Below are positions 13,701 to 40,957 of a stretch of DNA of 64,000 nt, piece by piece. The notes under the pieces were generated by a model. That model saw nothing but the letters and a program-made list of their open reading frames with translations. It was not told where the DNA came from and ran no database searches. The translations under genes were made by a program, and so were the position numbers. How positions within the stretch are numbered: the stretch's first letter is position 1; every line of letters starts with the position of its first letter. Source of the stretch: Mizuhopecten yessoensis (Eukaryota); assembly GCF_002113885.1 (NCBI RefSeq), contig NW_018408013.1, positions 859,690-923,689 of the forward strand, read 5' to 3'.

Positions 13701-15080
13701 GACTTCTTCCAATGTCTATACCAGGCCATGATGCGGTTAATCTTAATATTTATATGGTAATGCTGATATTAATTTAAAGTATTATTTTCCAACCTCCTTT
13801 AACGTAAATATCAATTTATCTACATTTTTACACTTATTTTTTATCGAATCACATTTTTTGTTCTTAAACATTCTTAGCAAAAAACATACTACTTCAAAAC
13901 GGTTTGACAATATGTGTTGATGCATAACGAGACATATTTAAACAATACCATATCAATGTTACTTCATTAATTTAGATCACATATCGGGCAGAAATAATAT
14001 AAAAAGGCATTGCATCCTTAATAGATAATTCGATGTTGCCGTGAGTACGCTGAAACGATTATTTGAGCACAGTGTAAATAGAATTTTTGTTTTAGTCCGG
14101 GTGTAATGGCCTTATAGGCAAATTAAATACGTTAACATTCAATATGCAAGAACATTTGCTGAAGCGTCTCATACATTCTGATACTAATGCACCATATGCC
14201 AGTAGAACCATTTAGCATTTTACGGGCAATATAATTTAAACAACACACATGAAAGGTTACGTCTGCGGTTTTCACGGAGTGAACAACATATATGCAGTTG
14301 AAAGTTGTAAAAATATGCCCTAGACACTTGCCAGAGTGAGTGTTGTTCTATTGATAATACACAGTCAAAGAAAATACAGTGTATATGGACATCTTAGACA
14401 TTCTGATTGATGATTTTGCGAATACGTCTAGTATGTAGGCGAAATTATAAGACGCAGACATGCAAAAATGGATAATTGACTTCGACTGTCATATATGGTG
14501 TCCTCTGTAAAATAGCAAACCTTCTCCGACTTCTGATAATAGATATCGAAGAGGGGAAAGCTAACCTTTTCATCCTATTCCTATAAATGTGATTGATGAA
14601 CGGTTCTGTTTTCCACTGGTTTCATACTTTTTATTTGTGGTGTTACATCGAAACGACTTTCGACTTCATCAATTATTTATTCATTACACATAAATTCCTA
14701 TTATTTTTAATTTCAAGGTTTGCCCCCGTAGGATTGATGTTCATAATAGCTGCTGCTGTCGTACAGATCGAGAGGCCGACGGAAGCCCTCCTCGAGTTTG
14801 CTGTCTTCATACCTACAGTTATATTTTGTCTTCTGTTGCATGGGTTTGGTACCGTACCGCTCATGTTTTTCTTGGTGACCAGAAAAAATCCTTATATATT
14901 CATAAAGAATATGTCCAAGGCGCTGCTGACAGCCTTTGGATCGACTTCAAGGTATGCATTACAAATAAGATATTAACTTTATTCTATCGAATATGAAATT
15001 TATCATTCAAACATTTCATCGTTTTATAAGCAAGCTTATTCATTTGACCGCTTTATCTGATGTTACAAGACAAAGAGAAT

Positions 15081-15285
15081 GGGCCACAGTGGCCAAATGG
15101 TTAAGGCATCTAACATTCTGTTACCATTAGCCCTCCACCACTGGGTCGCGGGTTCGAGACCTACGTGGGGCAGTCACCAGGTACTGGCTTTAATCGGTAG
15201 TTTTTCTCCGGGAACTCCGGTTTTCCTCCACCACCATAACCTGGCACGTCCTTAATTGACCATAGACGTGAAACACACAAAAAAA
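15081..15285 (+). mobile_element. tRNA-derived V-domain SINE in paralogue B intron 5
   Basis: A box tggccaaatgg, B box ggttcgagacc, V-like domain ttttctccgggaactccggttttcctccacc; a similar copy lies at 60191-60479. Confidence 0.75.
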
Positions 15286-17282
15286 TGAAACCAGATCAAG
15301 ACGATAATGATAACAAATTCACTTCTGACTATCGTAGTATTATGAAGTTATTTTGTGATATATTTGATAGAATAATAGGGTAATATCCCTTAATTCTTTT
15401 TAAACAATAACAAACATCACAATATCACGTTGTTTGTTGATATAAAATAAGTGTCTACTATAAACTGTGTGTTATGGTTTGTGTCTGTCCTAGTGCGGCT
15501 GCTCTCCCCTTCACGATGGACAACCTGATAAAGAAGAGTAAGGTCAACAGCCGTGTTGTCAATTTCATTGCTCCGATAGGGGCAACCATCAACATGGACG
15601 GTACTGCGCTGTATATTCCGATGATGGCTGTTTTTATTTCCCATCGTATTGGATTGGTTTTGGAACCTGCACGCTATGTTGTGATCGGGTAAGTCCATAA
15701 GTTCTGCTGTCAAGGTCGAATAATATCTTAATTTTTGAATGACAAATATAAGTGGCTGAGAAAATTTGCAACTCTTTATATGTGCTGGTGTCATTAATGT
15801 TTACACCGACATAGGACATAAATCCAAGAATAAAACTTGGTGTTTTTAAGTATGACCTGCCTAAAGTATACAGACAATTGATTTGTTAAATCTGTATAGG
15901 TTACAGATAATGCACTTAGTGAGATATACATTTTCATAAAATTGTTTGATACTCACATTTAAGGAGTGAACTTGATACTTAAGGTACGTTTCGAGGTGTT
16001 GAGAATCAATACGCCGAATTTGCCATTCCGGATGGTTATTTCTATAACCTGAATGATAATTTCGCTAGCGTATTGTTGGATTTATAATGCAAACAATTTG
16101 TAAAAAATCAAAATCGTACACATTCTCTTTTCACCATTTTCCTGCATTGCATTTGGTTTGATGAATTAGAAAATGTTTTAATGTCCAGAAATCGCTAATG
16201 CACATACAATGTTGTGTTACAAAATATCTTGATTGATTAATCATAACTCAAATATAATAGACACCTCTGCTCGAAACATTATACTAGTAGTCAACTTTAA
16301 GTAATGTCTGTTACTTCTTAGTTAGTTTTTTATGGTTGACAGAATAGGACAAGATATGTCACCCATAAACCACGAGGAGCGAATTTTATTTGCAGAAATC
16401 TGTGAGTCCATATGATCTGGATCCCTAAGTTGAAAAGCAATTTCGGTAGTCATGTGTTTCATGTACTTTTCTTGATCCTTCGACATAGTGTTAATTATAT
16501 AAGAACATAAAATCAATAATTCACAGGCAAATCATTGAGAAAAGACCTATCTTTAGGAAGGGAACGTATGTGTATGTTACAGTTTTAAGCAATCAATATG
16601 TCAGAAGTTAAGTCACAATTTGTCAAAAAGGTTAAATGAAGATTACACTTTCACAGTTCGGTTGTGAAATGAAATAAACAAAGTGCGCATTGATTTGTTA
16701 TTTAACAAAAACCGAGTTTAACATTAAAACCTTGATTCATCTTAACTTTAACGTTGCTACATGCGTAGAAAAGAAATTTAAATGCTTTTTTTGGTTTAAC
16801 AAATCGTAAACAGGACGGTGTAGTTATACCAGCGATTGATAGAATCTGTATGAATACATTAATTAAGCAACATGATACTTATTTGTTTACCGACAAAGAT
16901 CACATTGCTAACTATAGCCCTGAACTCGGGTTATGGGATTGGTAGGTCTATGGTGATAGCTTGAATTATAGCTTTCAAAACCGTAAGTAAGTAACAGGAG
17001 CATAACCTTGAAACACACAAAACTGTCCCCATATTTGTCATATCTTATGCTAGAATATCAGCCATAGGAGTATCCTTATGGGCAGCAGCCATTCCAGGCA
17101 CGGATGGTCGTGACCGTGGCGGCCATGGCGGTAGGACTTCCTGTAGAACAAGTCCTCCTCACTGCTCCGTTTGATTGGATTTTGTAAGTAATGTAATTTT
17201 GCTTCATAATTTATATATGTTTCCTTTGTATTTCAATAACGATTTGTTAAGAAAGTACATCTACTCCTGTTTACGTATGTAG

Positions 17283-17486
17283 TGTCTGTCTCATCAACTG
17301 ACATGTTTACATATGTCTGTCTCATCAACTGACATGTTTACATATGTCTCATCAACTGACATGTTTACATATGTCTGTCTCTTCAACTGACATGTTTACA
17401 AATGTCTGTCTCATCAACTGACATGTTTCCATATGTCTGTCTCTCAACTGACTTGTTTAAATATGTCTCTCTGATCAACTGACATG
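17283..17486. repeat. 31-bp minisatellite, about 7 copies
   Basis: Unit tgtctgtctcatcaactgacatgtttacata. Confidence 0.9.
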
Positions 17487-20309
17487 CACATTCTCCATTT
17501 TGGGGATATCATTAACGATGGACATTTTTTCTTCATTAAAGCCATTGTGTACGGTGAAATGGAATTTAATTGCATTACAAATATCGAGAGTGAAAAGGTA
17601 GGGAAAGGGCTGTCTAACAACATAACACATAAATAACGCAAAACAATTAACAGTCACGGGACGAAAAGGTCAAAGAACAGTTTAAAAACAAGCTTAACAG
17701 TGAAATACATACTTTGGAAATGATAAAACATAACAAACTTTTTCATGATTAGCAGTTTGTATGAACTATTTACAAAGAACAAAAAGGTATCACAAGCCCT
17801 GCCTCGAGCACGCATACACACAAGCCCTGCCTTGGGCACGCAGGCACACAAACCCTGCCTCGGGCACGCACGCACGCACACACACAAGCACGCATAAATT
17901 GCACACATGGAGGCACGTCCGTCAATGTCCTTAATAGGATGCTAAACAAAATAACACCAAACCATGTATCCTAAGGACGACGAACATATAAAGTAATGAA
18001 CATAGAATATAACTATGCCATATTCGGATGAAACACACCTCGAGATGGAACTCTTCAGCACCTTTCACAATATATGAGTAAACTTCAACGTTAGACTCGT
18101 AATGGCCTTTTTGTGTGTACCAGGTATTCGAAACATTGTACAAGTGGACGTAACGTTGAGTCAGCGTGGAGGGTGGGGGGAAACGTCACGGTGGAAAGTG
18201 GTGATCGTTTGCCCGCACGTGACGTGCAAAGTAGACAATTGTGATAGCATAGGAATATAACTACAGCAATCTAAGTATGTGATTCGGGAGTCGTAGTTCC
18301 TGAAGGAAAAAGACTCTCGCTTCCTTCTTAATTGTCGCGTGTGCACAACACAAAGGAAACTGCTTCATTATATTAAGATATTACGTTGAATATATGTTTG
18401 TAAAATATGAAGCGCAGATATAAATATTTAATCTCCGATCTTTATAATAAAGTTTGATGGGAATAAAAACAAAGGTTTATCGAATTTAAATAATAAAATC
18501 TTTTACGTTAATCGTGAATCCAACATATGCTAACAAAGTGGTTTTGTTTATGTTGAGAACTTACATACCGTGCCCTATTATCATAATGTTACATGTTTTT
18601 ATTCACTGGCATGTTACAAACTAAGAAAGTGTCCATAAACTTCACTCTCTTTCATGGTTTCCGTACCATATTACACTATGGCACATACAAATATAATTCC
18701 ATCTGTTTTGTGTTGAAAGTCACCACACTGTGACATATTTAGGAAAGTGAAGAATTTAATCAATTGATTTTGTCAAACATTGAATGACTCAATATAATAG
18801 ATTTAGCTAAAATAGAATTTAAAGACTTTGCCAAGATTATTTGCACTCAAACGGTGGAAGAGGTGTTAGTGAGTGTAAGGGAGGACAACTCTGGGTAGAG
18901 ATTGCCAGTTCTCTATATCGCTATGAGATGTATCTCCCTTCCCGTATCATAACTTTCAACATGTTAATATAGTAATATCCATAATTGATAAAGCTGTGAT
19001 ATTCATACCACGGAAGAGAAATTATATAGGCCGTTAACCTTTGAGTAAGCAATCCTTCTTATATAATAAAACTTACGCAGGTCCAGGGAAATAGCAAGTT
19101 GGCTTTATCCGACTGCATGATTGTAAGATGCAAGTAATTCGGTGGCCATGCAGAATGAGGGGTGGTTTCTTCCTTGTTTTCTGTTCAGGGAGCTTTGAAG
19201 TAACTAAGAATGTGTATCGCAAAAGGCGACTAATATGGCCCTCCTGCATAATCGCAAATTTCCTCTGTTTTAAACAAAATATTTCAAATTCTGTATTGCA
19301 ATTTATCTGAGTGGTCCTTGTGCCTTTTAAACCCGTTATATTGTTTCAAATTTACACCTTAGATATCTATTAGATAGCGGTTGTCTTAACTGATATAGAT
19401 GTAAACACCATTCTAGAACAAAATATAGCCAATCACTATAAAAAAATACTGTATCTTCATTTTTTCTTTTTTTATCAAAAAGGCACGTGATGACTGCTTT
19501 TCATTTTATTACGTTGTCTTTGTACTTTTTTTAAGTTATGCATGTCTACAAAAATAAAAATAACGGGGTTTTTTGAGCGAAAAAAAATCATGTACGATGT
19601 AAAAGCGTCCTAATAACATGGGAATGTTGATGGCTTTCAACGAATGATAAAGTATCTGTATAAATATATAAAGGATGCTTATTTTTTGTTGTCCAAACAT
19701 TGAACCTTTTTCTTTATGCAATGAACGATTTCGGGTAATGATCAACGTTTCGGGAGATTCTTTTGGAGCCGGCATCGTCGACCATTTGAGTTCTTCCATG
19801 CTGACAAATGACAAACCAGAAGTGAAGAGTACATCATCAGAATGTCCTGGAGATGCCGAGGAGGAACACACTTTTGTTTGATATGGACATGTTTTCTTCA
19901 AAGACTTGGCGTAAGATTAAAAAAAAAAAAGTTCCATGAGAGAGGTTTATCACATGTCAACTTGTGGCGTGATTCTACCTATGGATGCTTGGGTGAATAT
20001 TTCAAGTATCGGTACAGTAAAATATATACAGATGTAATAATTGTATTTGGCATCTCGCAATGTTGAAAGTAAATTACAAGTATCATTATATTGTGTTATT
20101 CATGTAATAGGTTACCGTTTCACAGATCGTCCTGTTATGATACCCCTTTATCATTCATAGCACATGTTTTCTTTTAATAAACAATGAGAACAAATACGAC
20201 GTGTAAACAAAACCATAATTCGAACTAAAAATTGATTAAACTAGGACGAATTATGAAAAAAATGATATGGAGACCCTTGAAAAATAACAGAGATAATTAG
20301 ACTATGTGT

Positions 20310-25720: not shown

Positions 25721-26754
25721 ACGGCTTACTGCTACGTTGTATATAGTATGGCACTTATGTTAAAGCAGTCTTCTAAAATAACGAAAACAATATATAAACT
25801 CGGCCAACTTCATAGTGCAGGGAAACATTAAGTAAAGTAAACAAGTAAAGTGACCGATGAACAAATGAAAGTGTCAATTGTACGGTTTCAAATTATGAAT
25901 ATTGTTAATAACTAATTATCCCATAAATGTCTTTAAAGTTTAGACATGATGCTTTCTTTGGACCCCGATACTGTTACTCAAGAAATGTTATAACTGATTT
26001 CTGACTTTAAAAAATAAGGATATCTATACATCGGTTTTTCACTTTTGCCCCTCTAATTAATGAGTTAATACATAATAGGTTTTCAAGACAGGTTCAAAAT
26101 TTGTGGCCATTTTACGTTTGCGTGATTAAAGCTATTTTATGAATGAAAGTTATTAAATTATTATTCAAAACATCACGCTGATTGTGTAAATTGACAAATC
26201 AAGCAAGTATCAAAACATATGACTACAATATGTTATGTCATTTAATTAGCGCGTGATTTGTGACATTGTTTACTCCAGAAGTGGAACTATGGGAAAGAGT
26301 CATGAGCATCTTCTACTCGTCAGGTTTCTAGGGATTCGAAACTGCTACACAAATAATTAACTCGTATGAAACGAGATGCATTCATGAAATTCTGTATCCG
26401 TTTACGGAATATTTACATGACGTCTTTCGCTCGTTTTGTAAAACGTGTTTAATTTTCAAATTAATAAATCTTTTTTTGCACTGTTAGGTTTGAATTGTTA
26501 CTGAACTTTGCATGATCAAAGAAGAGCATGTTTTGCTATAGAATACAAACTGATTGTAGATTGACGGCTGTCGGTACATCCATCGGAGCAGCCTGAATAC
26601 CTAGCGGTATGGTGGTAATGTCCCTTGCTGTGATGGCCGCAGGGCTTCCCTTAGAGCAGTTACTTGTTCTAGCGCCAATTGAATGGGTATTGTAAGTCAT
26701 ATTTACTTTATCATATGACTGTCTATGTGTTAATTACAAATAAAAGAATATTTA

Positions 26755-29511
26755 TCCACAGCGTCAAAACAAGAACATTTGTGAATAAGATTAACTACAG
26801 CGTCAAAATACAGTATGAGCAACAACAAAATATACCACAGCATCAATATACGAGAACAAAATACAGCACAATGTCAACATACATTGCTTTTCAATGTCAA
26901 ACTATACTACAGCGTAAAAAGCACAACGATAAATAAATATCACAGCGTCATCACACAGGGACAAACTTTACCACAGCGTGAAAACACAACGATAAATAGA
27001 TATTACAGCGTCGTCACACTAGGACAAAATATACCACAGCGTGAAAACAACAATAAATAGATATCACAGCGTCATCACACAAGGTCAAACTTTACCACAG
27101 CGTGAAAACACAAAGATAAATAGATATTACAGCGTCATCACACAAGGACAAAATATACCACAGCGTGAAAACAACAATAAATAGATATCACAGCGTCATC
27201 ACACAAGGACAAACTTTACCACAGCGTGAAAATACAAAGATAAATAGATATTACAGCGTCGTCACACTAGGACAAAATATACCACAGCGTGAAAACACGA
27301 CGATAAATAAATATCAAAACGTCATCAAACAAGGACAAACTATACCACAGCGTGAAAACACAATGATAAATAGATATCATAGTCATCACACAAGGACAAC
27401 ATATACCACAGCGTGACAACACAATGAAACATAGATATCACAGCGTCATCACACAAGGACAAAATATACCACAGCGTGAAAACACAATGATAAATAGATA
27501 TCACAGCGTCATCACACAAGGACAAACTATACCACAGCGTGAAAACACAATGCTAAATAGATATCACAGTCATCACACAAGGACAACATATACCACAGCT
27601 TGACAACACAACGATAAATAGATATCACAGCGTCATCACACAAGGACAACATATACCACAGCGTGACAACACAACGATAAATAGATATCACAGCGTCATC
27701 ACGCAAGGACAAACTTTACCACAGCGTGACAACACAACGATAAATAAATATCACAGTCATCACACAAGGACAACATATCCCACAGCTTGACAACACAACG
27801 ATAAATAGATATCACAGCGTCATCCTCACAAGGACAAACTTTACCACAGCGTGACAACACCATGATAAATAGATATCACAGCGTCATCACACAAGGACAT
27901 CATATACCACTGCGTGACAACACAACGACAAATAGATATCACAGCGTCATCCTCACAAGGACAAACTTTACCACAGCGTGACAACACCATGATAAATAGA
28001 TATCACAGCGTCATCACACAAGGACAACATATCCCACAGCGTGACAACACAACGATAAATAGATATAACAGCGTCATCACACAAGGACAAACTTTACCAC
28101 ACCGTGCAAACACAACGATAAATAAATATCACAGCGTCATCCCGCAAGGACAAACTTTACCACAGCGTGACAACACAATGATAAATAGATATCACAGCGT
28201 CATCACACAAGGACAAAATATACCACAGCGTAAAAACACGACGATAAATAAATATCAAAACGTCAGCACACAAGGCCAAACTATACCACAGCGTAAAAAC
28301 ACAACGATAAATAGATAGCACAGCGTCATCACACAAGGACAAACTTTACCACAGCGTGACAACACAATGATAAATAAATATCACAGTCATCACACAAGGA
28401 CAACATATACCACAGCTTAAAAACACGACGATAAAGAGATATCACAGCGCCACCACACAAGGACAAACTGTACCACAGCGTGAAAACACAACGATAAATA
28501 GATATCACAGCGTCATCACACAAGGACAAAATATACCACAGCGTGAAAACACGACGATAAATAAATATCACAGCGTCATCACACAGGGACAAACCTTACC
28601 AAACCGTGCAAACACAACGATAAATAAATATCACAGCGTCATCACACAAGGCCAAACTATACCACAGCGTAAAAACACAACGATAAATAAATATCACAGC
28701 GTCATCACACAAGGACAAACTATACCACAGCGTAAAAACACAACGATAAATAGATAGCACAGCGTCATCACACAAGGACAAACTTTACCACAGCGTGACA
28801 ACACAATGATAAATAAATATCACAGTCATCACACAAGGACAACATATACCACAGCGTGAAAACACAACGATAAATAAATATCACAGCGTCATCCCACAAA
28901 GATAAACTATACCACAACGTAAAAACACAATCATGAATTAATATCACAGCGTCATCCCACAAGGACATAGTATTCCACAACGTAAAAACACAACGATAAA
29001 TAGATATCACAGCGTCATAACACAAGGTCAAACTTTACCATAGCGTGAAAACACAATCATAAATTAATATCACAACGTCATCCCACAAGGACAAAGTATT
29101 CCACAACGTAAAAACACAATGATAAGTAGATATCACAACGTCATCTCACAAGGACAAACTTCACCACAGCGTGAAAACACAACGATAAATAGATATCACA
29201 GCGACATAACACAAGAACAAAGTATTCCACAACGTGGAAACACAATACATGGACAAACTATACCACAGCGTGAAAACACAACGATAAATAGATATCACAG
29301 CGACATAACACAAGAACAAAGTATTCCACAACGTGGAAACACAATGATAAATAGATATCACAACGTTATCACGCAAGGACAAACTATACCACAGTGTGAA
29401 AACACAATGATAAATAAATATCACAGTCATCACACAAGGACAAATTATACCACAGCGTGAAAACACAATGATAAATAGATATCACAGCGTCATCACACAA
29501 GGACAAACTAT
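26755..29511. repeat. 63-bp minisatellite, about 40 copies, in the intron of relic D
   Basis: Unit ataccacagcgtgaaaacacaacgataaatagatatcacagcgtcatcacacaaggacaaact; the left edge is degenerate. Confidence 0.95.
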
Positions 29512-29814
29512 ACATGTACAACAACGTTAAAACATGAATATGAAAAACTCGTTTGAACATGAGTAAAACATTTATCAAAACTTGTACACACCGTTAGAAA
29601 ATTCTTCACAATATCTCCGTAACTAATAAATATCACTGGCTCAACTTGTCAGTGCCGAATATACCACAGGGGCACATAAAAGGGTCAGACTGAACGAACG
29701 ATGGCTGAATATATCAAAGCGACTACACTTGTTGACATAATATACCAGTTCAAATACATATGAACAAACCCTATAACAGTTTTAATACATGTAACAGAGG
29801 TAATATTTTTGTTC

Positions 29815-29945
29815 AATGCCTCCGCTAGGAGTCGAACCCTGCACCTCTGGTTTACTAGTCTTACGCTCTACCGAATGAGCGAAAGAGAAATTTTCCCTAA
29901 CCGAGTCGGAAGGCAGCGGCTTGTATTTCACATGGGTGACATACT
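29815..29945 (-). mobile_element. tRNA(Thr)-like repeat head (SINE-like); degenerate copies at ~30085-30190 and ~31790-31895
   Basis: Reverse strand reads tcgctcattcggtagagcg...ctagtaa...ggttcgactcc (A box, AGT anticodon-like loop, B box). Confidence 0.55.
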
Positions 29946-30232
29946 CCCCCTCAAGGAAAGAACTCGTCCCGCGTGTTCTACGGGTCATAGCGATTCTTGT
30001 GAAAGTATCGATGATCATATGTCATTTGTCAATATTTCACGGGTCCGTTCGTGGGCGCCAATGTGACAGAAGTCATTTTTTTAATGGCTTCACTAAGAGT
30101 CGAACCCGGGACCTCTACCGAATGAACTGAAGAGAAAATCTCCTTAGTGTAGTCGGTAGAAAGCGGCTAGTATTCCACCAGGGTGACATATACAAGAACT
30201 AACTATACTGTAGTATAAACAGAACAACATGN

Positions 30233-31722
30233 AATGGGGAAACCCCTTTTATGAATTTTGGAGGGATACTATCAGGGCCTGAAGGTTTATTAGTATTGAG
30301 TAGATCGAGCTGATCAAGAATGTCCTGTTCGGTTATGTCTATTGTTGAGAAGCTATGTCGGGGTCGGGGGCAATCAGGAGGTAAATCGTCAGCATTCTTT
30401 TCAGTTACGGAAATCGAAGTGAAATAATCGTTAAAAGATTCCGCCTTATCTATGGGGTGGATTTTCAGTTCGCCGTTGATAATCAATGGAGAGTCATTTT
30501 CGTTTTTGTTTTTGAGATTCATAACCGATTTTGCAATACGCCACCATTTTCCGGGGGGTATGGTTTTATCAATTAAAGAAGATTGAAGTTTAGATAAATA
30601 TTTTTCTTTAGCTTCCCGGACTAAGGATATAACTTCATTCCGAATAGATCTAAATTTTGCCCAGGAAGATGGAGTATTATGTAGCTTAGCTTTGGAATGC
30701 TGGCGATTTCTTTGTCTAATTTTGAGTCTGATACCATTAGTCATCCAAATTTTATCATTAGGTCTTATTGTTACTGTTTTATGGGGCACGAATAGGTCGA
30801 TAGCAGTTAGGATTTTATCAGTTAAGAGAGAGTTCATATTTTCAATATCACCTTGTAATAAAAGATTCCAGTCAATGGACTTAAGATACTCATTTGCCCC
30901 GTCAAAGTCAGTGTTATTGAAGTATAATAAAGTCTTTTTATATGCATGTTTCTTTAAAGTTTTAAATTTCAGATCAGCGCTTACTGGACAGTGATCACTA
31001 CAAGAGGGAGGATGTACTATTGTATTTTTAATAAAGTTAACATTGTTTGTTAGTATAGTGTCAAGTGATGTTGAGGTCTGGGAAGTAATCCTGGTAGGTT
31101 CAGTAACAGTGTTTTCTAACCCATATTTCAACAAAATTCTATGTAGATGTGAGTTTGGATTTAGATGTAACATGTCTTGATTTATATCACCTACCAGGAC
31201 TACTTCCCTTTGCAGATCAATAATATTATTTAGGTTAATATCTAGCCTGTCCCAGTAGCCAACGAGAGAGTTAGGGGGTCTATATATACAGCCAAGAAAA
31301 ATAGGTTTATTATGGGTAGTTACTTCAGTCCATATTAATTCAAGATCATCTGTATCAAGGTCAGGTCCACGTTTAATATTAATATTATGTTTAGTATAAA
31401 TCAGAACTCCGCCACCATAATTATCTCTATCCTTTCTAAAAATATTACCAAAGTTTTTCAAAGATACAGCACTATCAGGAATTGAATTATCAAGATGAGT
31501 TTCAGAGACGCACAGTATATCGTATTCGGAAAATTCAGCATCAAGAATATGAGTTTTGTTCCTTAACGAACAAATATTGATATGACAAATAGAAATAAAA
31601 TCTAGGTGGATGTGGGAGTTGGGTGGACCGGGGTTCGGGTGAATATCACCGCATATGGATAGTATTAATAATAAAATAAAAATGTAGTGCAAATTCAGAG
31701 AGAATAGATTCAGAGAGACACT
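30233..31722 (-). mobile_element. Young CR1/L2-group non-LTR retrotransposon fragment (APE endonuclease up to the pre-RT region)
   Basis: Uninterrupted ~496-codon frame with HINICSL, CVSETHL, RKDR..GGGV, IYRPP, GDIN, EPTRIT, LD, SDH and KPSGPDSIP. It is cut at the assembly n at 30232. Confidence 0.92.
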
Positions 31723-32369
31723 ATATGTCATTTGTCAATATTTCACGGGTCCCTTCGTGGGCGCCAATGTGACAGAAGTCATTTTTTTAATGCCTTCACT
31801 AGGAGTCGAACCCGGGACCTCTACCGAATGAACTGAAGAGAAAATCTCCTTAGTGTAGTCGGTAGAAAGCGGCTAGTATTCCACCAGGGTGACATATACA
31901 AGAACTAACTATACTGTAGAATAAACAGAACAACATGACCATAATGACAACCATGTACCATTACACAATCATAACACGCAAAGCTAGACAATGATGAGAT
32001 AAACCAAGGCATAAATTAATAAAGACAGGGAGTTGAAAGTCTGCATTTTTAAGGGAAACAAACAGATTAACAAAAGCAACATTCTTGGAAGGTAAGCGTT
32101 TTATATACTGCTGAGAATATACTTTCAATATTATTCAACGCATTCCTTTCGAGCTCCTATCGCTGTTTGTTTTATGTTTCCATCTCATGTATCGGTGTGC
32201 TATAAAAGCACTATTATTCTTTTATTTTGCATGCTATTATATTTTCATATAGCAAGAACATAAAAGGAAACAAATCATTTATTTTGTTCCGAAGTCTGTA
32301 CTTTTGGATATTGTGTACAGCATTCATAGCGGTCCTCGGCAAGCTTGGGCAAATCAAAACCAAAAAACA

Positions 32370-32780
32370 GACTTTTTCATCCGCGGAAGATCTTTAAATG
32401 CTGTGTTGATTATTTCATGGTATTATTAATGCTATAAAATGATGGAATACTTATGAAAACGATCAATAAATCAAAGAAAAAATGTAAAAAATTAACGAAA
32501 AGGCGAGTTTTTTCAGTGAGCATCATGAACTATATCAATCTCAGATTACTACGCTTTTTGGACCGAATAATTTCTTCACAAAAAAAACAACAGTACTTAA
32601 TCTCCTTCCGCGAAAGATCTTTAGATAATGTGTTCATTATTTCATGATATGGTCAATGCTATAATATGGTACAGTATATCTGTATAAGCCAAAAGAAAAT
32701 ATGCAAAGATCTTTAACAGTGGCGTTTTTAATCAGTGAAATTTCCAAACTATATTTGGTTCAAATTACTACGCCTCGTAT
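32370..32780. repeat. Degenerate ~225-bp tandem duplication
   Basis: tccgcg.aagatcttta...ttatttcatg...aatgctataa and tcagtga...aactatat...attactacgc each occur twice, about 225 bp apart. Confidence 0.65.
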
Positions 32781-35768
32781 TCAAATAATCTAAAGTGTGT
32801 GTGTGTAATAGTGTTTCCCCCTTGTCCATAATTGCGTAGTTTCATTCTCGCGACTTGTTGAACGACTGTTTGATAACTGTCCTTGATAAAGTAGGCTTCG
32901 TTTTTTCTTTGTCTCAATAGAATGTGAAAGAAAATGTTGACTTATACCAAAAAAGCCGTCAGCAACTGTGCCTTACGAGTTTATAGATAGCTTCCCAATG
33001 CGACAGCAGCTGTGCCTAACGAGTTTGTAGACAGCTTCCCAATACAGTCTCTAGATAATGGCCCGATTAGTATAATGCAAGTGCTTCGTGAATAATGAAT
33101 ATTAAACATCAAAATTTAAAACCGTATATACATATTATTCATATTAACCAGAAACTGAATAATTATATACATGTAGGTCTTTAACCTTCGTTAAAATATC
33201 GAGAAAAGGAGAGATACACAAGGGACTTGCATAAAACCGTGATTACACGCACTGGAAATAAATCTCGTTGGTGTTTTTTTTGTATAATTAATCATGATAA
33301 TAACAAATTGTAATAATCATATCATAATTATCTTATTTTTTTATTTAATCGTAAATTAACTTTCCCATAATCTTACGCGACAATTTTGCAGGGTTGTCTG
33401 GTCAAGGTCACTGTTACTATTTTTAAAAAGATCATTGCCTGCGCTGTAGCCCTTTCATTCCTTGAAGGATTTCCATCGATTTAAAACACTAATTAAGGAC
33501 CATAATATCAGACAAGTTTCAATTATTTTAGCAATCCTCTGCTTGTTATATATATTTTTATTGAAAATTATGATTAAGAGATGGACTAGTATGATCCTTA
33601 CTCAACAACATGTTCTTTATTATTTACTGCCATTCTGTACTGATATACCACCTCCTTTATTCCATTATTTGAATGCTTTATACACAAAATCCCTGAGTGC
33701 CCTCGGCACTTTGATTAACTTAACGGCGCAAAACAAATATAATATCATATTAAACATATATTTTTTCCAGTGAACGGTTTCGGACAGTGGTCAATGTCAG
33801 TGGGGTGCAGGCATCGGCAATCACCTGTGTCGCTCCGTGCTCGCTGGGGAACCACACAAACACATAAATATCAGCGAAGGGGAAGAGGAACAGCTTGTAT
33901 GAAATGATAAAAGAATATGATGTCTGTATAATAAATACAAAACCAATTAAAACAATGGCTACTATATATCTAAAAATGTTAGCGATGACATTTGTTAATT
34001 ATCTTATATGAGATAATACTATACTAATACTATTTAGTATCCATATGTGGTAAAGTGCCTTAGAGTAATTTTACATAATATATACGGCGCAATATAAACG
34101 TTGTATATTATTATTATTATATGCACATTAATTTTAAATAGTTGATGGTGACTTAAGCAACAGATGTTCTTTTATTGCTATAAATAAAGTTCACTTTGAC
34201 ATGCCAAGGTAATTATACTTTTAACATGTATGTGTAATGTTAATATATACTAGCCGCCACAGAATGCATAATGCCTTCTGTAGCTTATAACCGTTCGTAT
34301 GATTTTTGTCGAAAACGACTGAAAGCTGTAATTAATCCTTTGATTTGAAACCTCGGTTGCTGTCTACCATTTTAACTGAAAGAAAAATTATCAATTTAAA
34401 TAACATCACTCGCCTTCGGCAGTTAAATGAACATTTGCACAACATGTGGTTAAAAATTTATCTTAAACACTTGACAAAAATGCATAGGATAAGCACAGGA
34501 CAGAATGGAAAATTTGGAACACAACATCATCAACTATAACAGCATCTGTTCCTGACACCATAATAACTTTTATTAGATCAGGAATGGTAGAAGTTGAGAA
34601 ATTCGTAAACTGGCAAATGTGAATTTACAGCACGTCTAAGTCCTTTGGATATAAGTGAGCCAGCAAAAACAAAACATCTTGCTAATGTGGTGATATTTTA
34701 CACTAAGTTCGTTAATATTTGTTAATATCACTAGAGAAGAACTATTAAATTTTGTCTCTTTTTCATAATTAAATCTAGTCCCTTGGGGGACCACAACCTT
34801 CATTTATACCAGATTGAATTGCCTTGGCCAATGGATTTTCTAACCAATTGAGGTCGAAATCGCTTCATCTGAATTTAAGAAGTTATCTATCAAATTATAG
34901 CTCTGTTTTCCCTTACCAGATCAGGTGCGATATTTGGTATCGGAACGCATCATCTCGTATATTAGTAGACTTAATAAGTATTTAGAGTTTTGGTTATACT
35001 AATATAAAAATGGAATAATGAAAATTATCACACGTGAAGGATTATATAATAATTGTAAAACACTCAAGGTTTTATGATTTTGAGGACAATGTGTTGATCG
35101 ATGAATACTTTTAAGATTTATATGTAGGACATAGTGGTATGGAATTACAGTACTGAATGAATGTAGGTATACACTGAATAACAGTGCTGTAATGTATCTA
35201 CAGTTTCAACACCAATACACATCAAACATTAAATGGCAATATGATGCAGTCATTTGTTAAATCATACAAGGTCAACTACGATGATATAAAATTAATAAAG
35301 TGAATTCTTCTAAAATTCTTTAAATATTTATAGATAATTATCCTAATGCATATACAATATTACCTCAAATAAAGTTGAAACCGTTGAGTATATACACTTT
35401 AACCCCTTCATAGAAACAGCAATAGAAAAATTGAATACTGTTTCAGATATGAATATTCATGTTTATTTAAACAGCGAAACAGCAGCAAACATACCAAATA
35501 CAGTGATTACAGATTCCAATTAAATATTGTTCCCTTTTTTACACAGAAATATTAATATGTTAATTACATCAAAAAATCATAGTTTGATGCAAATAACTAA
35601 AAATACAAATAAATAGAAGATACAATGTTGCTATAGCTTTCAGATGATACTGCTTATTTTCATATGAACTGAGCATTTATTCGAGCTGTATTGTATACTT
35701 ATGTCAATAATTCAATATGAGTGCATGCAACATTTGAACTGCACTGTAACGACAATGACCATCAGGTA

Positions 35769-38700
35769 TCACACCAGACCCTCTGTTTCTCCGAGGCTAA
35801 TAGACCTGCTTCTGTCCTTGGCGTCAGTCTCCTGCTTGCTGTCTGTCTCGCTGTTTAGAACTTTAGAAGACAAATGATTGACTATTCCGGCCCCGAGTGA
35901 ATCGCCGTTAACATTGACGACAGCTCGGAACCTTTCACTGTAGTAACAAACCATAATGATAATAATTTGTTAAACCATATTCACGAAAACGTCACCTGTT
36001 TCGGGTTTGTATTGACAATTATTCTATTTAATCTCATACTTATTCATATATCGCCCTTTGATGCCATATAGTTTAAGTTGGTGTAAGCAGAAGCAAATGA
36101 AGTATCTAAAAACCATGTGTATAAAAAATAATTATGAATCCCAACCAATATCAGAGGCGATTATGACATGTTATCCTTTGTTTACACATATCGCCNACTT
36201 AAATTAAATAGAAAAAAAATCATATGACAATTATATCAATACACAACAGAATCAAGGAGCCTAAACGAAAAGCTTAAACCGTTAATACTAAAATAATGAA
36301 CATTTTGCTCATCCAGCCAGTTATGTATAATATATATACGATTGCTTACATAATCCAGTCTACGGGGGCAACAAGAAGTATTTGATCTCCAGGTAGACCT
36401 ACTGCCATGCTTGCGATCGTCATTGTAATTATTCCAATTCCAGGTGCGCTGGCCGCTCCTATCGAAACGGCAACAGCAGTAACACTGGAACGATAGCAAT
36501 GTACATTTTACGACTTTTACCAAATTATATTGATAAAACCTGACTTCTAAGCACACATGTCATAAACACTGTTGATCTTACAGTACATTGCATCTATTCA
36601 TTGCAAACTTTAAAGGGTCATGACCATTCAGGGTAAGTTGATTAAAAACACAAATATGCAAGTATAACAAGCCGGTCAAGCAGGTTGATTTCATCACGGA
36701 GCGAGTGTTTTATGTGTCCGAATATTACAAATAAATGGGTTTGATTGATTTACATTAAATTGAATTGGTTTAATGATTCAGCATGTTAATCGAATGTACA
36801 TGTTTTACAGCGATGGCTTGCTTACCCAATTATGAAGTAGTTTCCGAAATCTAACGTCAAGCCGAGCCGCTGGGAAAAGAATATTGTTAACATAGGAATA
36901 TATAGGGCACATCCGTCCATATTGATAATGGCACCTATTGGAGTGATGAAGTTGACAACTCGACTATCAACGGTATTCTTGTTGACCAGACAGTCCATTG
37001 TTACGGGGAGTGTCACAGCGCTATAATCATAACATAGTTATAATTTCTTTAAGGTAGTAACATGATTTATAAAATACACACTCTACTAATTGATTATTAA
37101 CTAACGATTGCTTCTCTTGATTTTGAAATTCATAAATTCGGGGCTTTTAACCACCTCTTCTTCTGTTTAACAGTAGTTTATACCAAATTGGATTTCCAGT
37201 TTATTGGCCCATAGGATCAGCGATGAGTACTGTACGAAAGAGCTATTTGATGCATGTAATTCATTTTTGGCATACTGTATATATTACAAAATTTAAAAAA
37301 TGAAGGAGCATGTGTGTGTGACGTTCATCGCACAAACGAAAAAGTATTGAGTGGAATAGATTAGTTATCTCTATAATACGTGTTGATTATTTTTTTCTAT
37401 ACTGAAGAACATGTTTCAAATGTAATCATATCATCGGCTTTGTATCACAAACAATGGCCGTTGGCTGATTTCTGATAACCGTGTTTACATAGATAATGCT
37501 GAAATCCTTGCGCGAAGTTGTGTTCCTGCCTTACCTGGAGGACGTACCAAACGCTGTCAGCAAAGCTTTAGACATGTTACGGACGAATGTATATGGATTC
37601 CTTCTTGTCACCAGTAAGTATAACAATGGTAAGGTTCCAAATCCATGCAGCAACAAGGACAGTACTACAGTAGGGAAAAAGACTGCCAATTCCTGGAGGA
37701 CGACCAGGGGCCTCTCTGTCTGTACTACCGTGGAGGCTATAAGGAAAATCAGTCCCACGGGAATAAACCTGCAACACATACACATGTTTATGCAATGAGT
37801 TGATGATGTATAACAACTGACTTTAGAAATGAAGTGCTCCTACAACCTGTGATAGATCAATCCCTATCAAAAATGATATCATTAGATCTGCGTTGGGAAC
37901 ACCTCCTTGCTTTGAAATGCTAAATGGCTATTGACATGTACTGATATCAAATATATGTCAATTCGTATTTATGAAAGTGAATGTTATACAAGAAGTATCA
38001 GTTTACTGTTATCTTCTAAGATACGCATCATGTGTGCATGGTGGAATTGCATTCGTATATATTGCCATGTAAAGGGATGCATAATTTCATTTCAAAACAA
38101 TTGTCTCCAATAAGATTTTCTGTATTTACTTACCAAATAAATATAGCAATCATTCGCATCACCACCTGGTACATACACCGGAAGAGGTCAGTCATTGGTT
38201 TGGCCTTTTCCTCCATAATAGACAGGATACAGCCGATAAGAATGGAGAAGACAATCAGGCCAAGCATGTTTGTCCCAGGGACAGATATCAGTCCGGGGAC
38301 TTCGATTGTCAAAGACCTACCTACTAGGAGGGGGGGGGGGGGAATAAAGAAATCCGAAATGTCAACAAAAATCGAAACTAATCCGAACTCAAAGTCGCTA
38401 TAACTACGGTAAAATATGAACAGGGGAAATACTTGCATTGAGAATAACATTAAGTCCATTTCTACTTGTAGCATTCAGCTTAAAGGCATTTCATCCTATT
38501 TAAGGAAACGATATGTATGAAATATTAGTTTTGCAGTGTTGGTAAATACTCTACCGACTTTGACGACAGCAGTGTTCCATGCAAGCTATTTTCCCAGACA
38601 TATTTCATGACTTGATTGGACACAATTAGGTACAACAATACAAAATCTTATCCAAAATATCATCTTGCTACCAAATGCCTTGCTACACTTCTTAGAAACA

Positions 38701-40957
38701 TTTAATTATAGTTATAGCCTCATTACCTCACACTCCAGAAATAATATAAACGGTATGTATTTTTTTAAGAACTTAAATCAGAAAATTACTGGGGGTTTTT
38801 CACTATTAAAACTAACATGCTTTTACACTAATGAGACAACAAGAGACACCGAAATGTCAACAAAAAAGTCATTCGAACTCAAACCCACCAAAATGTGAAC
38901 AAACAAGTACAAAGAGAACAAGACCAGGTGTTCCGGAAGGTGTGCCGCTCTTTGCTTTAGCCTTCGCTTAGTGCTCTTCATCTTTTATCTTGATCTTTAT
39001 TGAAAATTTGATCAACAGGAGCTACCAGGCTGTATGATAAGAGTGGTAATTTCTATTCTCCGGCCTTGAACTTTGTTTTCTTTATAGCTGCGGCATCATT
39101 GCCTCTGTTTACATGCCCAATTGTTGTGGTATTCAATAGGTTATTTCGTTTATAAGGATTTTTGTGTCGACTCATGACTGATAAATAACAAATCACGATT
39201 ATGAGAGGTGCATGTTGATGAGGAGTATGGACAAGTGTGATTGTCGCCTTCGTGGTTTCCTTGGATATATTCTATGCCCTGAAGTGATATGAAGGGCGAT
39301 GTGTTTGAGTTTGCTCACCGTTGTGTCCGTGTCTGTCGTTATCACTACCCCAATTCGCGATTTGTAGTCGGGATATTACTGGGAATGTGACTTTGGTTAA
39401 CATGGCAGATGTTGTCAGAAGACGACAAGCTATTCGAAACACCTTGTCTCATATATCATATATATATATCGCACTTTATTTTGTTGACTTACATGTAATG
39501 TAAGATTATTGGATATAATTCTAGTAATGTGTATGATTTATATCAACACATACCTGAGGTATTTACAAAAATATGATATCCGCCTTCTGAGTTATTAAAA
39601 CCTGGAAAAGATTCGACGCCAATTTCCCGGATTTCTTCTTTCACCACCGTTTGCTTCTACGATAAATTTTGCAATGGTAAAGATGACATCAAATTTCAAA
39701 CCGTAACACATAAATATGTTCAGTACGCACAAGTAACTATTGACTACCAATTTTCACAATTATCAATACAAAACGTGAGTTGCCATAACATCGGTTAACT
39801 GGTCATAAACAAAAACGGAATATGAAAAATTAAAATCAAATGGCATCAAATAAACTAAACAGCTGCGCAGAATCACTTTAGCGTTGAAATTTCAACTTTC
39901 ACAAAATAGAATGAAAGCGAGTGCGAAAGAAATGGGGTGATTAGTCCAAAAGAAAATGAAATCAACTGTACCTTATACAAAACAAAAATGCAATGTATTA
40001 ACTTAATGATGGCAAAAGAATATTATATATAAGATGCAGAAAGATAATAAAAACATCAAAAAAATAAAATGGTGATCCCCACAGACAAATTGACGTCAAC
40101 ATCAGATGGAAACTGAATTTCGGAAGCGCCAACTATTATCCTCTACTACGTGTTTCAATGACAATTCATTCCAAATGAAGTGGACCACTACAATATTTAT
40201 AAATATATAAAACAATGAAATTACACGAAAAGATATACCTTTGAAAGTATTGCCTCCACAATGTTGTCCGGAAAAGTATTTCTAAATGGGGAAAAGAAAA
40301 AGAAAAAAACCGTCACAAGCAAGTCATTTGTTGCTTAAGGTCCTCGCAACAGCCAAGATCATATGAGGATGGGTGCTTCGAGCAACAACACCGGAAAGCA
40401 AATCGAATGAAGCAGTAGCTACTATTAATAGTTAAATTAACTTACATTTATCATTTTCACTTCTATAATACATGCTTAAAACATCCACAAATAATTAAAT
40501 AATAAGCATAAATAATTATATCAAACCTTATTATGTCCAAAAATGAGTCCAAATGGTTTATTGCATTAACTGATTTGTCGAATACGTCTACCGTATTGCG
40601 TCCAGGATGAACTATCACGGCCACAACGATACCAGTGACGACAGCACAAAGAGTGGTTGTCAAGTAGTAGACCAACGCCCTCAGTCCGATACTACCGGAA
40701 GTCTTCATCGATAACGAGGCCAGGGAAGAGACAATACCCGAGACAATGAGTGGCACAGACACCATCCGTAGTGTACTGAACATAATTTCTCCAGGGAACC
40801 TCAAATAGGCGATTTTTCTTTTCTCTAATGGCGACCACGATGTTCTTATTACACAACCAAGCCCAATCCCAACGAACATTGACAATATCATGCATTTTAT
40901 CAGCAGATTGTGTCTTATGAAGTTACACGTCAGCTTGGCACATCGTCCTCGCGACAT
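35769..40957 (-). CDS. SLC1A/EAAT-family amino-acid transporter, paralogue C (intact, 499 aa)
   Basis: Exons 40957-40527, 40281-40239, 39656-39554, 38323-38134, 37768-37535, 37020-36826, 36484-36350, 35937-35769 total 1500 nt. All introns are GT-AG, phases are consistent, and there are no internal stops. Motifs: HPG, FPDN, AFGTSSSAVTLP, NMDGCALY, SIGAA, DWIIERFRAVVNVNGD. Confidence 0.93.

What the first reader, a model, noticed from the sequence alone, without database searches (positions are those of the whole stretch)
35769..37020. Expanded SLC1 subfamily with a rewired substrate and ion-coupling site
Seen: intact paralogue C reads NMDGCALYIP (TM7), SIGAASAPGIG (HP2) and DWIIERFRAVVNVNGD (TM8). 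B has NMDGTALYIP and ERFRVMINVSGD; D has ERFRTVVNVS. Known: EAATs have NMDGTALYE and DRFRT. In human EAAT3 numbering, E374 is the proton carrier needed for K+ counter-transport (Q in ASCT and GltPh), D444 binds the substrate amino group, and R447 binds the side-chain carboxylate. Here E374 is I (B, C), D444 is E (B, C, D), the NMDGT Thr is C in C, and T448 varies (A/V/T). R447, N451, D455 and NMDG are kept. Inference: a lineage-specific Na+-coupled, H+/K+-independent carrier or exchanger for an anionic substrate other than ordinary L-glutamate, for example a sulfonate/osmolyte, D-amino acid or dicarboxylate.
Basis: partly seen in the sequence, partly recalled or inferred. Interest (0 to 1): 0.75.

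Follow-up and report, generated by a model that had tools for sequence, protein, structure and literature searches.

The report
Scallop-only glutamate-transporter relatives, coupling residues replaced
An intact gene in the Yesso scallop belongs to a scallop-only branch of the glutamate-transporter family in which the residues that normally carry the proton and hold potassium and the substrate's amino group have been replaced, so it probably moves a different acidic molecule in a different way, but nobody has tested it.

Summary
Paralogue C is an intact minus-strand SLC1 (PF00375) gene with 8 coding exons (40957 to 35772, stop at 35771-35769, about 499 codons). The stated coordinates cover only its last three exons. 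C reads NMDGCALYIP, SIGAASAPGIG and ERFRAVVNVNGD. In alignments to solved EAATs the Ile falls on E374, the Glu on D444 and the Ala on T448. N366/M367/D368, Y373, R447, N451, D455 and the TM3 YYxTTT motif are kept.

Neighbours B and D are broken in this assembly. The genome (Mizuhopecten yessoensis) also has 4 canonical ALYEA/DRFRT genes. The ALYIP/ERFR type sits in one array of six loci on one contig.

In 1.84 billion representative proteins the type occurs only in four scallop species. It forms a clade with 100/100 support on a long stem. Position 374 is I or V in all members, and position 444 is E, A or G.

C differs at only 1 of 68 universally invariant columns, namely T448A, so it is not decaying. 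Three RNA runs showed no reads on its exons.

The function is inferred, not shown. The best guess is a Na+-dependent, H+/K+-independent carrier or exchanger for an acidic substrate. The closest precedent is the mosquito dicarboxylate transporter CuqDCT.

The parts
40527..40957 (-). C, coding exon 1 (ATG 40957-40955; TM1-TM3 including the YYLTTT motif), donor AG|gt
   Evidence: Pfam SDF E 6.9e-20. 68% identical to the N-terminus of the A. irradians orthologue P0156, with the same start.
40239..40281 (-). C, coding exon 2 (43 nt, RNTFPDNIVEAILSK)
   Evidence: Acceptor tttag|, donor AAG|gt. The phase fits exon 1.
39554..39656 (-). C, coding exon 3 (103 nt, variable extracellular loop with NNS and NTS sequons)
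   Evidence: tblastn with P0156 gave a weak match, E 4.1. This is the least certain exon.
38134..38323 (-). C, coding exon 4 (TM4). The acceptor is at 38323 or 38320; both keep the frame.
   Evidence: Pfam SDF E 1.6e-09.
37535..37768 (-). C, coding exon 5 (234 nt, TM5-TM6 and the start of HP1)
   Evidence: Pfam E 1.7e-14. This exon is absent from the database model P0002 and from isoforms P0157 and P0004 of other scallops.
36826..37020 (-). C, coding exon 6 (HP1 and TM7, NMDGCALYIP)
   Evidence: Pfam E 1.8e-17.
36350..36484 (-). C, coding exon 7 (HP2, SIGAASAPGIG)
   Evidence: Pfam E 1.2e-06.
35769..35937 (-). C, coding exon 8 (TM8 ERFRAVVNVNGD, C-terminus ...ETEGLV, TGA at 35771-35769)
   Evidence: The C-terminal LV is shared with 9 other clade members.
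11543..19878 (+). B: same type (NMDGTALYIP, ERFRVMINVSGD). In this assembly it has a frame change in exon 1, at an A7 run near 11690, and another inside the HP2 exon (17055-17184). No loop exon was found.
26561..33839 (+). D: fragment of two 3' exons only. The HP2 exon (26561-26692) has an in-frame stop and the TM8 exon (33757-33839) has a frame change. A 63-bp minisatellite lies between them.
184..1055 (-). A: exon 1 and the small second exon only. The rest of the gene lies beyond the left edge of the window.
   Evidence: An ERFRT TM8 exon at G000:C4686:851018-851158 (-) probably belongs to A.

Best explanation
Paralogue C is an intact gene of a scallop-restricted (Pectinidae), fast-evolving offshoot of the animal EAAT branch of the SLC1 family. 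It arose by tandem duplication.

The protein keeps the SLC1 architecture. It keeps the sodium-site residues: N366/M367/D368, N451, D455 and the TM3 YYxTTT motif. It also keeps the ligands for the two carboxylates of an acidic substrate: the HP1 Ser that I equate with S333, plus N451 and R447.

Three residues of the canonical cycle are gone. The proton carrier E374 is Ile. The Asp that holds both the substrate amino group and the counter-transported K+ (D444) is Glu. T448 is Ala.

C therefore cannot run the canonical cycle of 3 Na+/H+/glutamate in and K+ out. Most likely it is a Na+-dependent, H+- and K+-independent carrier or exchanger for an acidic compound bound differently from L-glutamate. 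Relatives with AQFR or GRCR in TM8 are the better candidates for dicarboxylates.

Shown here: gene structure, residues, clade, restriction to scallops, and conservation. Inferred: everything about ions, substrate and direction of transport.
For: Gene model: 8 exons, all GT-AG, phases fit, 1497 or 1494 nt. It is colinear with the 496-aa A. irradians orthologue P0156, which aligns end to end with solved EAAT1-3 (E 1e-95 to 1e-104).

Residue equivalences.

Clade:
- A profile of 4 ALYIP TM7 exons, searched against 1.84 billion representatives, gave P0001-P0004 at 111-137 bits, an unrelated P0005 at 105, then 78 and below.
- 12 of the 120 proteins listed (the query P0001 and 11 others at 55% identity or more) all come from four scallop species. 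The next best hit is 46% identical.
- In the tree of 30 rows the 11 divergent rows are monophyletic at 100/100 on a stem of 1.62. C groups with P0199, P0205 and P0156 at 99/96.

Constraint:
- C differs at 1 of 68 columns invariant in the 26 other eukaryote rows, and that change is T448A. Other clade members differ at 0-3 of 47-73.
- The C-terminal LV is kept in 10 of 10 complete C-termini.
- A second haplotype in run X1 has 1 synonymous change in the 195-nt TM7 exon, against 12 listed substitutions and 1 insertion in 392 nt of flanking intron. Fisher p is 0.07 to 0.026 depending on what is counted.

Mechanistic basis:
- Passages of PMC10160106: E374 is the proton carrier and pairs with R447 and G415. 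K+ is coordinated by D444 and T448. Any D444 mutation, including Glu, abolishes transport currents, and T448A cuts uptake by 80%.
- Abstract and Results of PMC3737229: mosquito CuqDCT, with D444N/T448A, transports dicarboxylates and lacks the K+-induced reverse current.
Against: No function was measured.

No RNA support: 0 reads on any C exon in X10, X13 and X15, with about 19, 18 and 24 in 100 of each run read and tissues unknown. X10 laid no read at all, so it is no test. X1 contigs cross exon-intron borders, so they look like DNA.

The only database model of C (P0002, 233 aa) is fragmentary. No clade cluster has a transcriptome-assembly source.

Two neighbours, B and D, are broken.

In EAAC1, D444E binds acidic amino acids but does not transport them (abstract of PMC2151622). 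A Glu at 444 could therefore mean a non-transporting protein unless other changes compensate.

Neither Glu nor Gln sits at 374 to hydrogen-bond G415. By the model in PMC10160106, closure of HP2 might then be impaired.

T370C and T448A are private to this species' copy.
Confidence: 0.5

Rival explanations
1. C is a silent duplicate on its way to becoming a pseudogene, like its neighbours B and D. Its odd pocket residues reflect relaxed constraint, not a new function.
For: B has two frame changes and D is a two-exon fragment with a stop. No RNA reads fell on C exons in three runs. T370C and T448A are private to this copy, while its three orthologues keep Thr at both. The database model is fragmentary.
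Against: The frame is open over 8 exons and about 499 codons, with all splice sites intact. Only 1 of 68 universally invariant columns is changed, which is within the 0-3 range of its relatives. C's end branch of 0.33 is no longer than those of P0156 (0.32) or P0199 (0.24). The C-terminal LV and the stop position are kept. The exon varies less than its introns in a second haplotype.
Confidence: 0.2
2. The clade no longer transports. The proteins act as substrate- or Na+-gated anion channels or as sensors, using the uncoupled anion pathway of EAATs.
For: D444E in EAAC1 binds L-aspartate with high apparent affinity but gives no transport, and binding modulates the anion conductance (abstract of PMC2151622). 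Loss of E374 removes the hydrogen bond to G415 that the EAAT3 structures link to closing HP2 for translocation (PMC10160106).
Against: The sodium-site and carboxylate-binding residues stay under tight conservation across four species. That fits a working transport domain at least as well. A bacterial homologue in the same search (P0019) also has Val at the 374 position in an otherwise canonical pocket, though its function is unknown. Nothing here tests conductance.
Confidence: 0.15
3. Despite the substitutions, C is an ordinary glutamate/aspartate transporter.
For: R447, N451, the HP1 Ser that I equate with S333, Y373 and NMD are kept. Glu at 444 still offers a carboxylate.
Against: In EAAT3/EAAC1, D444E abolishes transport, T448A cuts uptake by 80%, and changes at E374 abolish K+ coupling (passages of PMC10160106; abstract of PMC2151622). 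The same genome keeps 4 canonical ALYEA/DRFRT genes for that role.
Confidence: 0.05

Closest known systems
Animal EAATs (SLC1A1-3, 6, 7; solved EAAT1, EAAT2, EAAT3)
   Same: Same Pfam family. The orthologue P0156 aligns colinearly at E 1e-95 to 1e-104. Shared features are NMDG, Y373, R447, N451, D455, TM3 YYxTTT, the HP1 and HP2 hairpins and a glycosylated TM3-TM4 loop.
   Different: E374 is Ile (Val in three orthologues), A375 is Pro or Ser, D444 is Glu (Ala or Gly in some relatives), T448 is Ala in C, Q413 is Gly, Asn or Ala, S334 is Ala, and FIAQ becomes F(I/F)S(Q/H). The C-terminus ends in LV instead of the xKM, xRM or xRL type endings of the canonical rows.
Mosquito dicarboxylate transporters CuqDCT/AeaDCT (PMC3737229)
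   Same: An EAAT-derived, lineage-restricted paralogue in which D444 and T448 are altered while D440, R447, N451 and D455 are kept. C shares the exact T448A change. CuqDCT shows that such changes can switch an EAAT to dicarboxylates and remove K+ counter-transport.
   Different: CuqDCT has the neutral Asn at 444, while C has Glu. The paper does not report a change at E374, whereas the scallop clade has lost it in all 11 members examined. The scallop type was found only in scallops, so the origin is independent. No mosquito sequence was put in my tree.
ASCT1/2 (SLC1A4/5) neutral amino-acid exchangers
   Same: SLC1 members without H+/K+ coupling and lacking Glu at position 374. ASCT1 and ASCT2 chains match C's exons.
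   Different: From recall, not from a call: ASCTs have Gln at 374, replace R447 by Cys or Thr, and keep D444. C keeps R447, has Ile at 374 and Glu at 444.
Archaeal GltPh/GltTk and bacterial DctA
   Same: Both are K+-independent SLC1 carriers. DctA has Ser and Ala at positions 444 and 448 (abstract of PMC3737229). Archaeal homologues lack Glu at 374 (PMC10160106). One bacterial homologue from the search (P0019) reads ALYVS like the C-type orthologues.
   Different: Archaeal homologues have Gln at 374, which hydrogen-bonds G415. Ile or Val cannot do this. The scallop clade nests among animal EAATs, not with prokaryotes.

Membership tests
SLC1 / Pfam PF00375 (sodium:dicarboxylate symporter family) | Match to the family HMM above the gathering score | tested here: met
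   5 of 6 open stretches of C score 28.3-71.9 bits against a cut-off of 27.9. Together they cover profile positions 2-365 of 387. The TM8 exon has no Pfam hit but matches EAAT1 TM8 at E 7.8e-07.
SLC1 / Pfam PF00375 (sodium:dicarboxylate symporter family) | NMDG unwound segment in TM7, serine-rich HP1, HP2 hairpin, TM8 N..GD | tested here: met
   NMDG, GTSS-S-AVTLP, SIGAASAPGIG and NVNGD are present in C.
SLC1 / Pfam PF00375 (sodium:dicarboxylate symporter family) | Sodium-site residues (N366, D368, N451, D455, TM3 Thr pair) | tested here: met
   all are present in C. Their assignment to the Na1 and Na3 sites is partly recalled and partly from passages of PMC10160106.
EAAT-type H+/K+-coupled glutamate transporters | Glu at position 374 (proton carrier, YE motif) | tested here: not met
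   Ile in C. Ile or Val in all 11 clade members examined.
EAAT-type H+/K+-coupled glutamate transporters | Asp at 444 and Thr at 448 (substrate amino group and K+ ligands) | tested here: not met
   Glu and Ala in C. Across the clade position 444 is E, A or G.
EAAT-type H+/K+-coupled glutamate transporters | Arg at 447 and Tyr at 373 | tested here: met
EAAT-type H+/K+-coupled glutamate transporters | Glutamate uptake coupled to 3 Na+, 1 H+ and counter-transport of 1 K+ | not testable with these tools
   Needs expression and flux or current measurements.
Eukaryotic SLC1 dicarboxylate transporters (CuqDCT/AeaDCT type) | Neutral residue at 444 together with Ala at 448 | tested here: not met
   C has Ala at 448 but Glu at 444. 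Relatives P0152, P0153 and P0003 (Ala) and P0154 (Gly) have a neutral 444 but keep Thr 448.
Eukaryotic SLC1 dicarboxylate transporters (CuqDCT/AeaDCT type) | Preference for succinate, malate or alpha-ketoglutarate over glutamate | not testable with these tools
   Defined by oocyte assays in PMC3737229.
ASCT-type neutral amino-acid exchangers | Arg 447 replaced, Gln at 374 (recalled) | tested here: not met
   C keeps Arg and has Ile. The defining residues themselves are from recall.

The most novel reading that the evidence does not exclude
Scallops have evolved a third solution at the SLC1 coupling switch: a hydrophobic Ile or Val at position 374, neither the Glu of H+/K+-coupled EAATs nor the Gln of archaeal and ASCT-type carriers. 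They have also lost Asp 444. This would be a second, independent conversion of an animal glutamate transporter into a carrier for another anion. Candidates are dicarboxylates such as succinate, imino-dicarboxylic opines, or D-aspartate, all prominent in bivalve metabolism by my recall. Subfunctionalised paralogues (ERFR, AQFR, GRCR) would differ in how they handle the alpha-substituent.
Probability: 0.3. Interest if true: 0.7.

Novelty: new variant of a known kind. Interest (0 to 1): 0.5.

Why it matters
Structures and mutants tie the EAAT coupling mechanism to three residues: E374, D444 and T448. Natural proteins that have replaced all three, yet stay conserved across four scallop species, are ready-made experiments on two questions. 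First, can an SLC1 transport domain close HP2 and translocate without Glu or Gln at 374? Second, how is substrate choice reset?

A 2013 paper stated that D444 and T448 are conserved in all eukaryotic SLC1 proteins except two mosquito transporters. The scallop clade is a second exception, with three different replacements at 444.

If the substrates turn out to be dicarboxylates or opines, this would also bear on bivalve anaerobic and osmolyte physiology.

On the practical side, the gene is mis-annotated as a 233-aa fragment. Its relatives are named 'excitatory amino acid transporter 1-like' or '3-like', which probably overstates what they do.

Tried and rejected
1. RNA evidence. The look-up of sequencing runs found no RNA holder. 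Read laying on X1, X10, X13 and X15 gave no read on any exon and no joint. The few reads of X13 and X15 (3 and 4) lie only partly on intronic repeats. This leaves expression and splicing unproven. It does not show silence.

2. Gene conversion as the source of YIP in C. The DNA alignment of the TM7 exons shows 66-68% identity between C and B or Z, with no long identical tract. I therefore rejected it as an explanation. YIP may be ancestral and YVS derived in the other three species.

3. General decay of C. This was rejected by the invariant-column count. The first count (5 of 68) was an artefact: the variable loop exon was misplaced onto TM3 by mafft --addfragments. I dropped that fragment and recounted.

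4. Literature on a scallop SLC1 clade. Searches found nothing. PMC6410316 (passages) concerns SLC16 and SLC22 only. The preprint 10.64898/2026.09.05.749567 (passages) never mentions molluscs. PMC12752514 was a false hit on a Science article number.

5. Structure prediction was not run. The tools return no coordinates, so a pocket model could not be inspected, and the fold is not in doubt.

7. Intactness of A, Y and Z and the whole-genome copy number were not settled.

8. The spliced protein of C was never joined or sent to any search.

Fig. S1 and Table S1 of PMC3737229 (the full SLC1 alignment) might qualify its statement that D444 and T448 are otherwise conserved in eukaryotes.
Full report
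WHAT IS THERE

The window is G000:C4686:859690-923689 of a 988-Mb assembly. A protein encoded on the same 934,720-base contig is named for Mizuhopecten yessoensis, the Yesso scallop.

A motif scan and a comparison of open stretches show four copies of an SLC1 (PF00375) gene in the window.
- A: minus strand, only its first two exons (184-1055).
- B: plus strand, 11543-19878.
- D: plus strand, two 3' exons at 26561-26692 and 33757-33839.
- C: minus strand, 35769-40957.

THE GENE MODEL OF C

I read the exon borders from the sequence and checked them against the 496-aa Argopecten irradians orthologue P0156 by tblastn.

There are eight coding exons: 40957-40527, 40281-40239, 39656-39554, 38323 (or 38320)-38134, 37768-37535, 37020-36826, 36484-36350 and 35937-35772. 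The stop codon TGA is at 35771-35769. All introns are GT-AG and all phases fit. The lengths sum to 1497 or 1494 nt.

The loop exon (39656-39554) rests on a weak match (E 4.1) plus splice sites and phase, so it is the least certain part.

The finding's coordinates cover only the last three exons. The only database protein for this gene, P0002 (233 aa), omits four of the eight exons and part of the first. No full-length model appeared among the 120 proteins listed.

They were searched and aligned apart.

THE OBSERVATION

It is confirmed. Five of the six long open stretches pass the Pfam gathering score.

Alignments to solved structures give these equivalences:
- NMDGCALYIP falls on NMDGTALYEA.
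- SIGAASAPGIG falls on SIGAAGVPQAG (405-415 of EAAT3).
- ERFRAVVNVNGD falls on DRFRTMVNVLGD (444-455).

So E374 is Ile, T370 is Cys, D444 is Glu and T448 is Ala. N366, M367, D368, Y373, R447, N451 and D455 are kept, as is the TM3 YYLTTT motif.

The number 374 follows from the listed ungapped range for an EAAT3 chain. The alignments actually printed for TM7 are to EAAT1 and EAAT2.

THE NEIGHBOURS

In this assembly B has a frame change at an A7 run in exon 1 and another inside the HP2 exon. D has an in-frame stop in its HP2 exon and a frame change in its TM8 exon, and no other exons were found. Whether B's changes are real or assembly errors could not be checked.

THE FAMILY IN THIS GENOME

PF00375 gives 74 exon-level matches. 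The TM7 exon of C finds 17 places. They fall into three groups.
- Six are ALYIP type: C, B, and two further genes on the same contig at about 812-818 kb (Z) and 823-830 kb (Y), plus two small contigs that repeat Y and Z.
- Four are canonical ALYEA genes with DR(F/I)RT in TM8, on contigs C4290, C5546, C4683 and C4470.
- Seven belong to a third, much more divergent set in which NMDG itself has decayed. Five of the seven were read.

ERFR-type TM8 exons occur only on C4686 (Z, Y, one at 851 kb that probably belongs to A, then B, D and C) and on one small contig. The subfamily is therefore one array of six loci within about 89 kb. At least two of the six are broken.

DISTRIBUTION

A profile of four ALYIP TM7 exons (alignment A1) was scored against 1.84 billion representative proteins. 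2298 proteins reached E 0.001. Only P0001-P0004 scored 111-137 bits. P0005 (105 bits) is a different type with a canonical DRFRT. The next score was 78 bits.

I then searched with the full-length P0001. The query and 11 further proteins at 55-68% identity are all named for Ylistrum balloti, Pecten maximus, Argopecten irradians or M. yessoensis. The next best hit is a canonical scallop EAAT at 46%.

In a maximum-likelihood tree of 30 rows (525 of 781 columns; the rows are a choice from the hits; P0002 stands for C) the results were:
- The 11 divergent scallop rows form one group at 100/100 on a stem of 1.62 changes per column.
- There is a C-type subclade (C, P0199, P0205, P0156) at 99/96 and a B/Z-type subclade at 100/98.
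- The group sits among molluscan EAATs. Its sister is unresolved.

Canonical and divergent genes share the same 'longest contig' value in Y. balloti and in P. maximus. That fits an origin by local duplication but does not prove it.

RESIDUES ACROSS THE CLADE

- Position 374 is Ile in all 7 B/Z-type rows and in C. It is Val in the three C-type orthologues. It is never Glu or Gln.
- Position 444 is Glu in 6 of the 10 rows that reach TM8, Ala in 3 (AQFRT) and Gly in 1 (GRCRT).
- T370 is T, I, V or C.
- T448 is Thr everywhere except in C (Ala) and in the broken B (Val).
- R447, N451, D455 and NMD are kept in all rows that reach them.

The Cys at 370 and the Ala at 448 are thus private to the M. 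yessoensis copy of C.

IS C UNDER CONSTRAINT?

- Orthologue pairs of the divergent clade are 68-81% identical, against 87-91% for canonical scallop EAATs between the same species. The clade evolves two to three times faster but is far from free.
- C differs at 1 of 68 columns that are invariant in the 26 other eukaryote rows. That one change is T448A. Its relatives differ at 0-3 of 47-73 (the loop exon was dropped after it misaligned).
- All 10 complete C-termini of the clade end in LV, C included. The canonical rows end differently.
- A second haplotype in run X1 covers the TM7 exon and its flanks. It has one synonymous change in 195 exon bases, against 12 listed substitutions and one insertion in 392 intron bases. 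Fisher p is 0.07, 0.04 or 0.026 depending on whether the insertion and two unlisted differences are counted. This is weak evidence.

Evidence against a live gene:
- No reads fell on any C exon in three RNA runs, read to about a fifth each. One of them laid nothing at all, so it is no test.
- No transcriptome-derived proteins appear among the clade's clusters.

HOW IT PROBABLY WORKS

Passages of PMC10160106 state the following.
- E374 is the proton carrier. It pairs with R447 in the apo state, and when protonated it bonds to the carbonyl of G415 to close HP2.
- K+ sits where the substrate amino group sits, held by D444, T448 and hairpin carbonyls.
- Mutation of D444 to any residue, Glu included, abolishes transport currents, and T448A alone cuts uptake by 80%.
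- Archaeal homologues, which have Gln at 374, do not couple to K+.

The abstract of PMC2151622 adds that D444E still binds acidic amino acids but unproductively. It also says that a carboxylate side chain at 444 keeps succinate out.

The abstract and Results of PMC3737229 show that a mosquito EAAT paralogue with D444N/T448A prefers succinate, malate and alpha-ketoglutarate. It lacks the K+-induced reverse current, and N428D restores EAAT-like behaviour.

On this basis C cannot run the canonical cycle. It keeps what is needed to bind Na+ and a substrate with two anionic groups.

I therefore favour a Na+-dependent, H+/K+-independent carrier or exchanger for an acidic compound. The AQFR and GRCR relatives are the likeliest dicarboxylate carriers. 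All of this is inference. The rivals are a silent, decaying copy (0.2), a non-transporting channel or sensor (0.15) and an ordinary glutamate transporter (0.05).

COMPARISON WITH WHAT IS KNOWN

C is a member of SLC1 and descends from animal EAATs. It fails three defining residues of the H+/K+-coupled EAAT type. It does not meet the ASCT pattern (residues recalled) or the CuqDCT pattern (it has Ala 448 but Glu 444).

It is best called a new variant of a known kind: a second eukaryotic lineage, after two mosquitoes, with natural changes at D444 and T448. It appears to be the first noted in which E374 is replaced by a hydrophobic residue across a conserved clade.

The sequences are in public databases under EAAT-like names. 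Four literature searches found no description of the clade. The scan's own notes held nothing on it.

VERDICT

Interest is moderate (0.5): this is a clean natural experiment for SLC1 coupling, with a precedent, and so far without evidence of function or expression.

Noticed in passing
G000:C4019 (about 405-498 kb), C76491, C2474, C4866; loci L031-L037: A third, very divergent SLC1-like set in the same genome. It gives seven TM7-exon matches at 26-35% identity to C. NMDG is replaced by forms such as NADG, SSNG, SANG and GRTG, and the position matching E374 is again Ile.
   Followed up: partly
window 37535-37768 (-); proteins P0157, P0004, P0002: The 234-nt exon for TM5-TM6 is in frame when skipped. 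Skipped forms are annotated as isoform X2 in Pecten maximus and Argopecten irradians and appear in the database model of C. They would lack two helices of the scaffold.
   Followed up: no
window 35772-35790 (-) and the C-termini of P0156, P0199, P0205, P0001, P0151-P0154, P0003: All complete clade members end in an acidic stretch followed by x-L-V, while the canonical EAATs in the set end in K-M, R-M, R-L or Y-L. This looks like a clade-specific C-terminal sorting or PDZ-type motif.
   Followed up: partly
window 26898-29513: A 63-bp minisatellite of about 41 copies (86% matches) lies between the two remaining exons of pseudogene D. It explains the strong AT and GC skew seen at 26-30 kb in the composition profile.
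   Followed up: partly
window 37148-37328, 38777-38957, 40225-40405: Three intronic stretches of C have summed contig depths of 88-154 in run X1, against 0-13 elsewhere. They also attract partial RNA reads. They are probably dispersed repeats.
   Followed up: no
G000:C81431:1080-1454, C68247, C2530, C78777: Small contigs repeat single exons of C, Y and Z at or near identity. They are probably unmerged haplotypes, so exon counts for the family overstate the gene number.
   Followed up: no
protein P0005: A 458-aa database protein carries two TM7-TM8 stretches with NMDGGAVFAA or NMDGGAVYAA and DRFRT. It looks like a fused or mis-joined model of tandem SLC1 genes from an organism I did not identify.
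   Followed up: no
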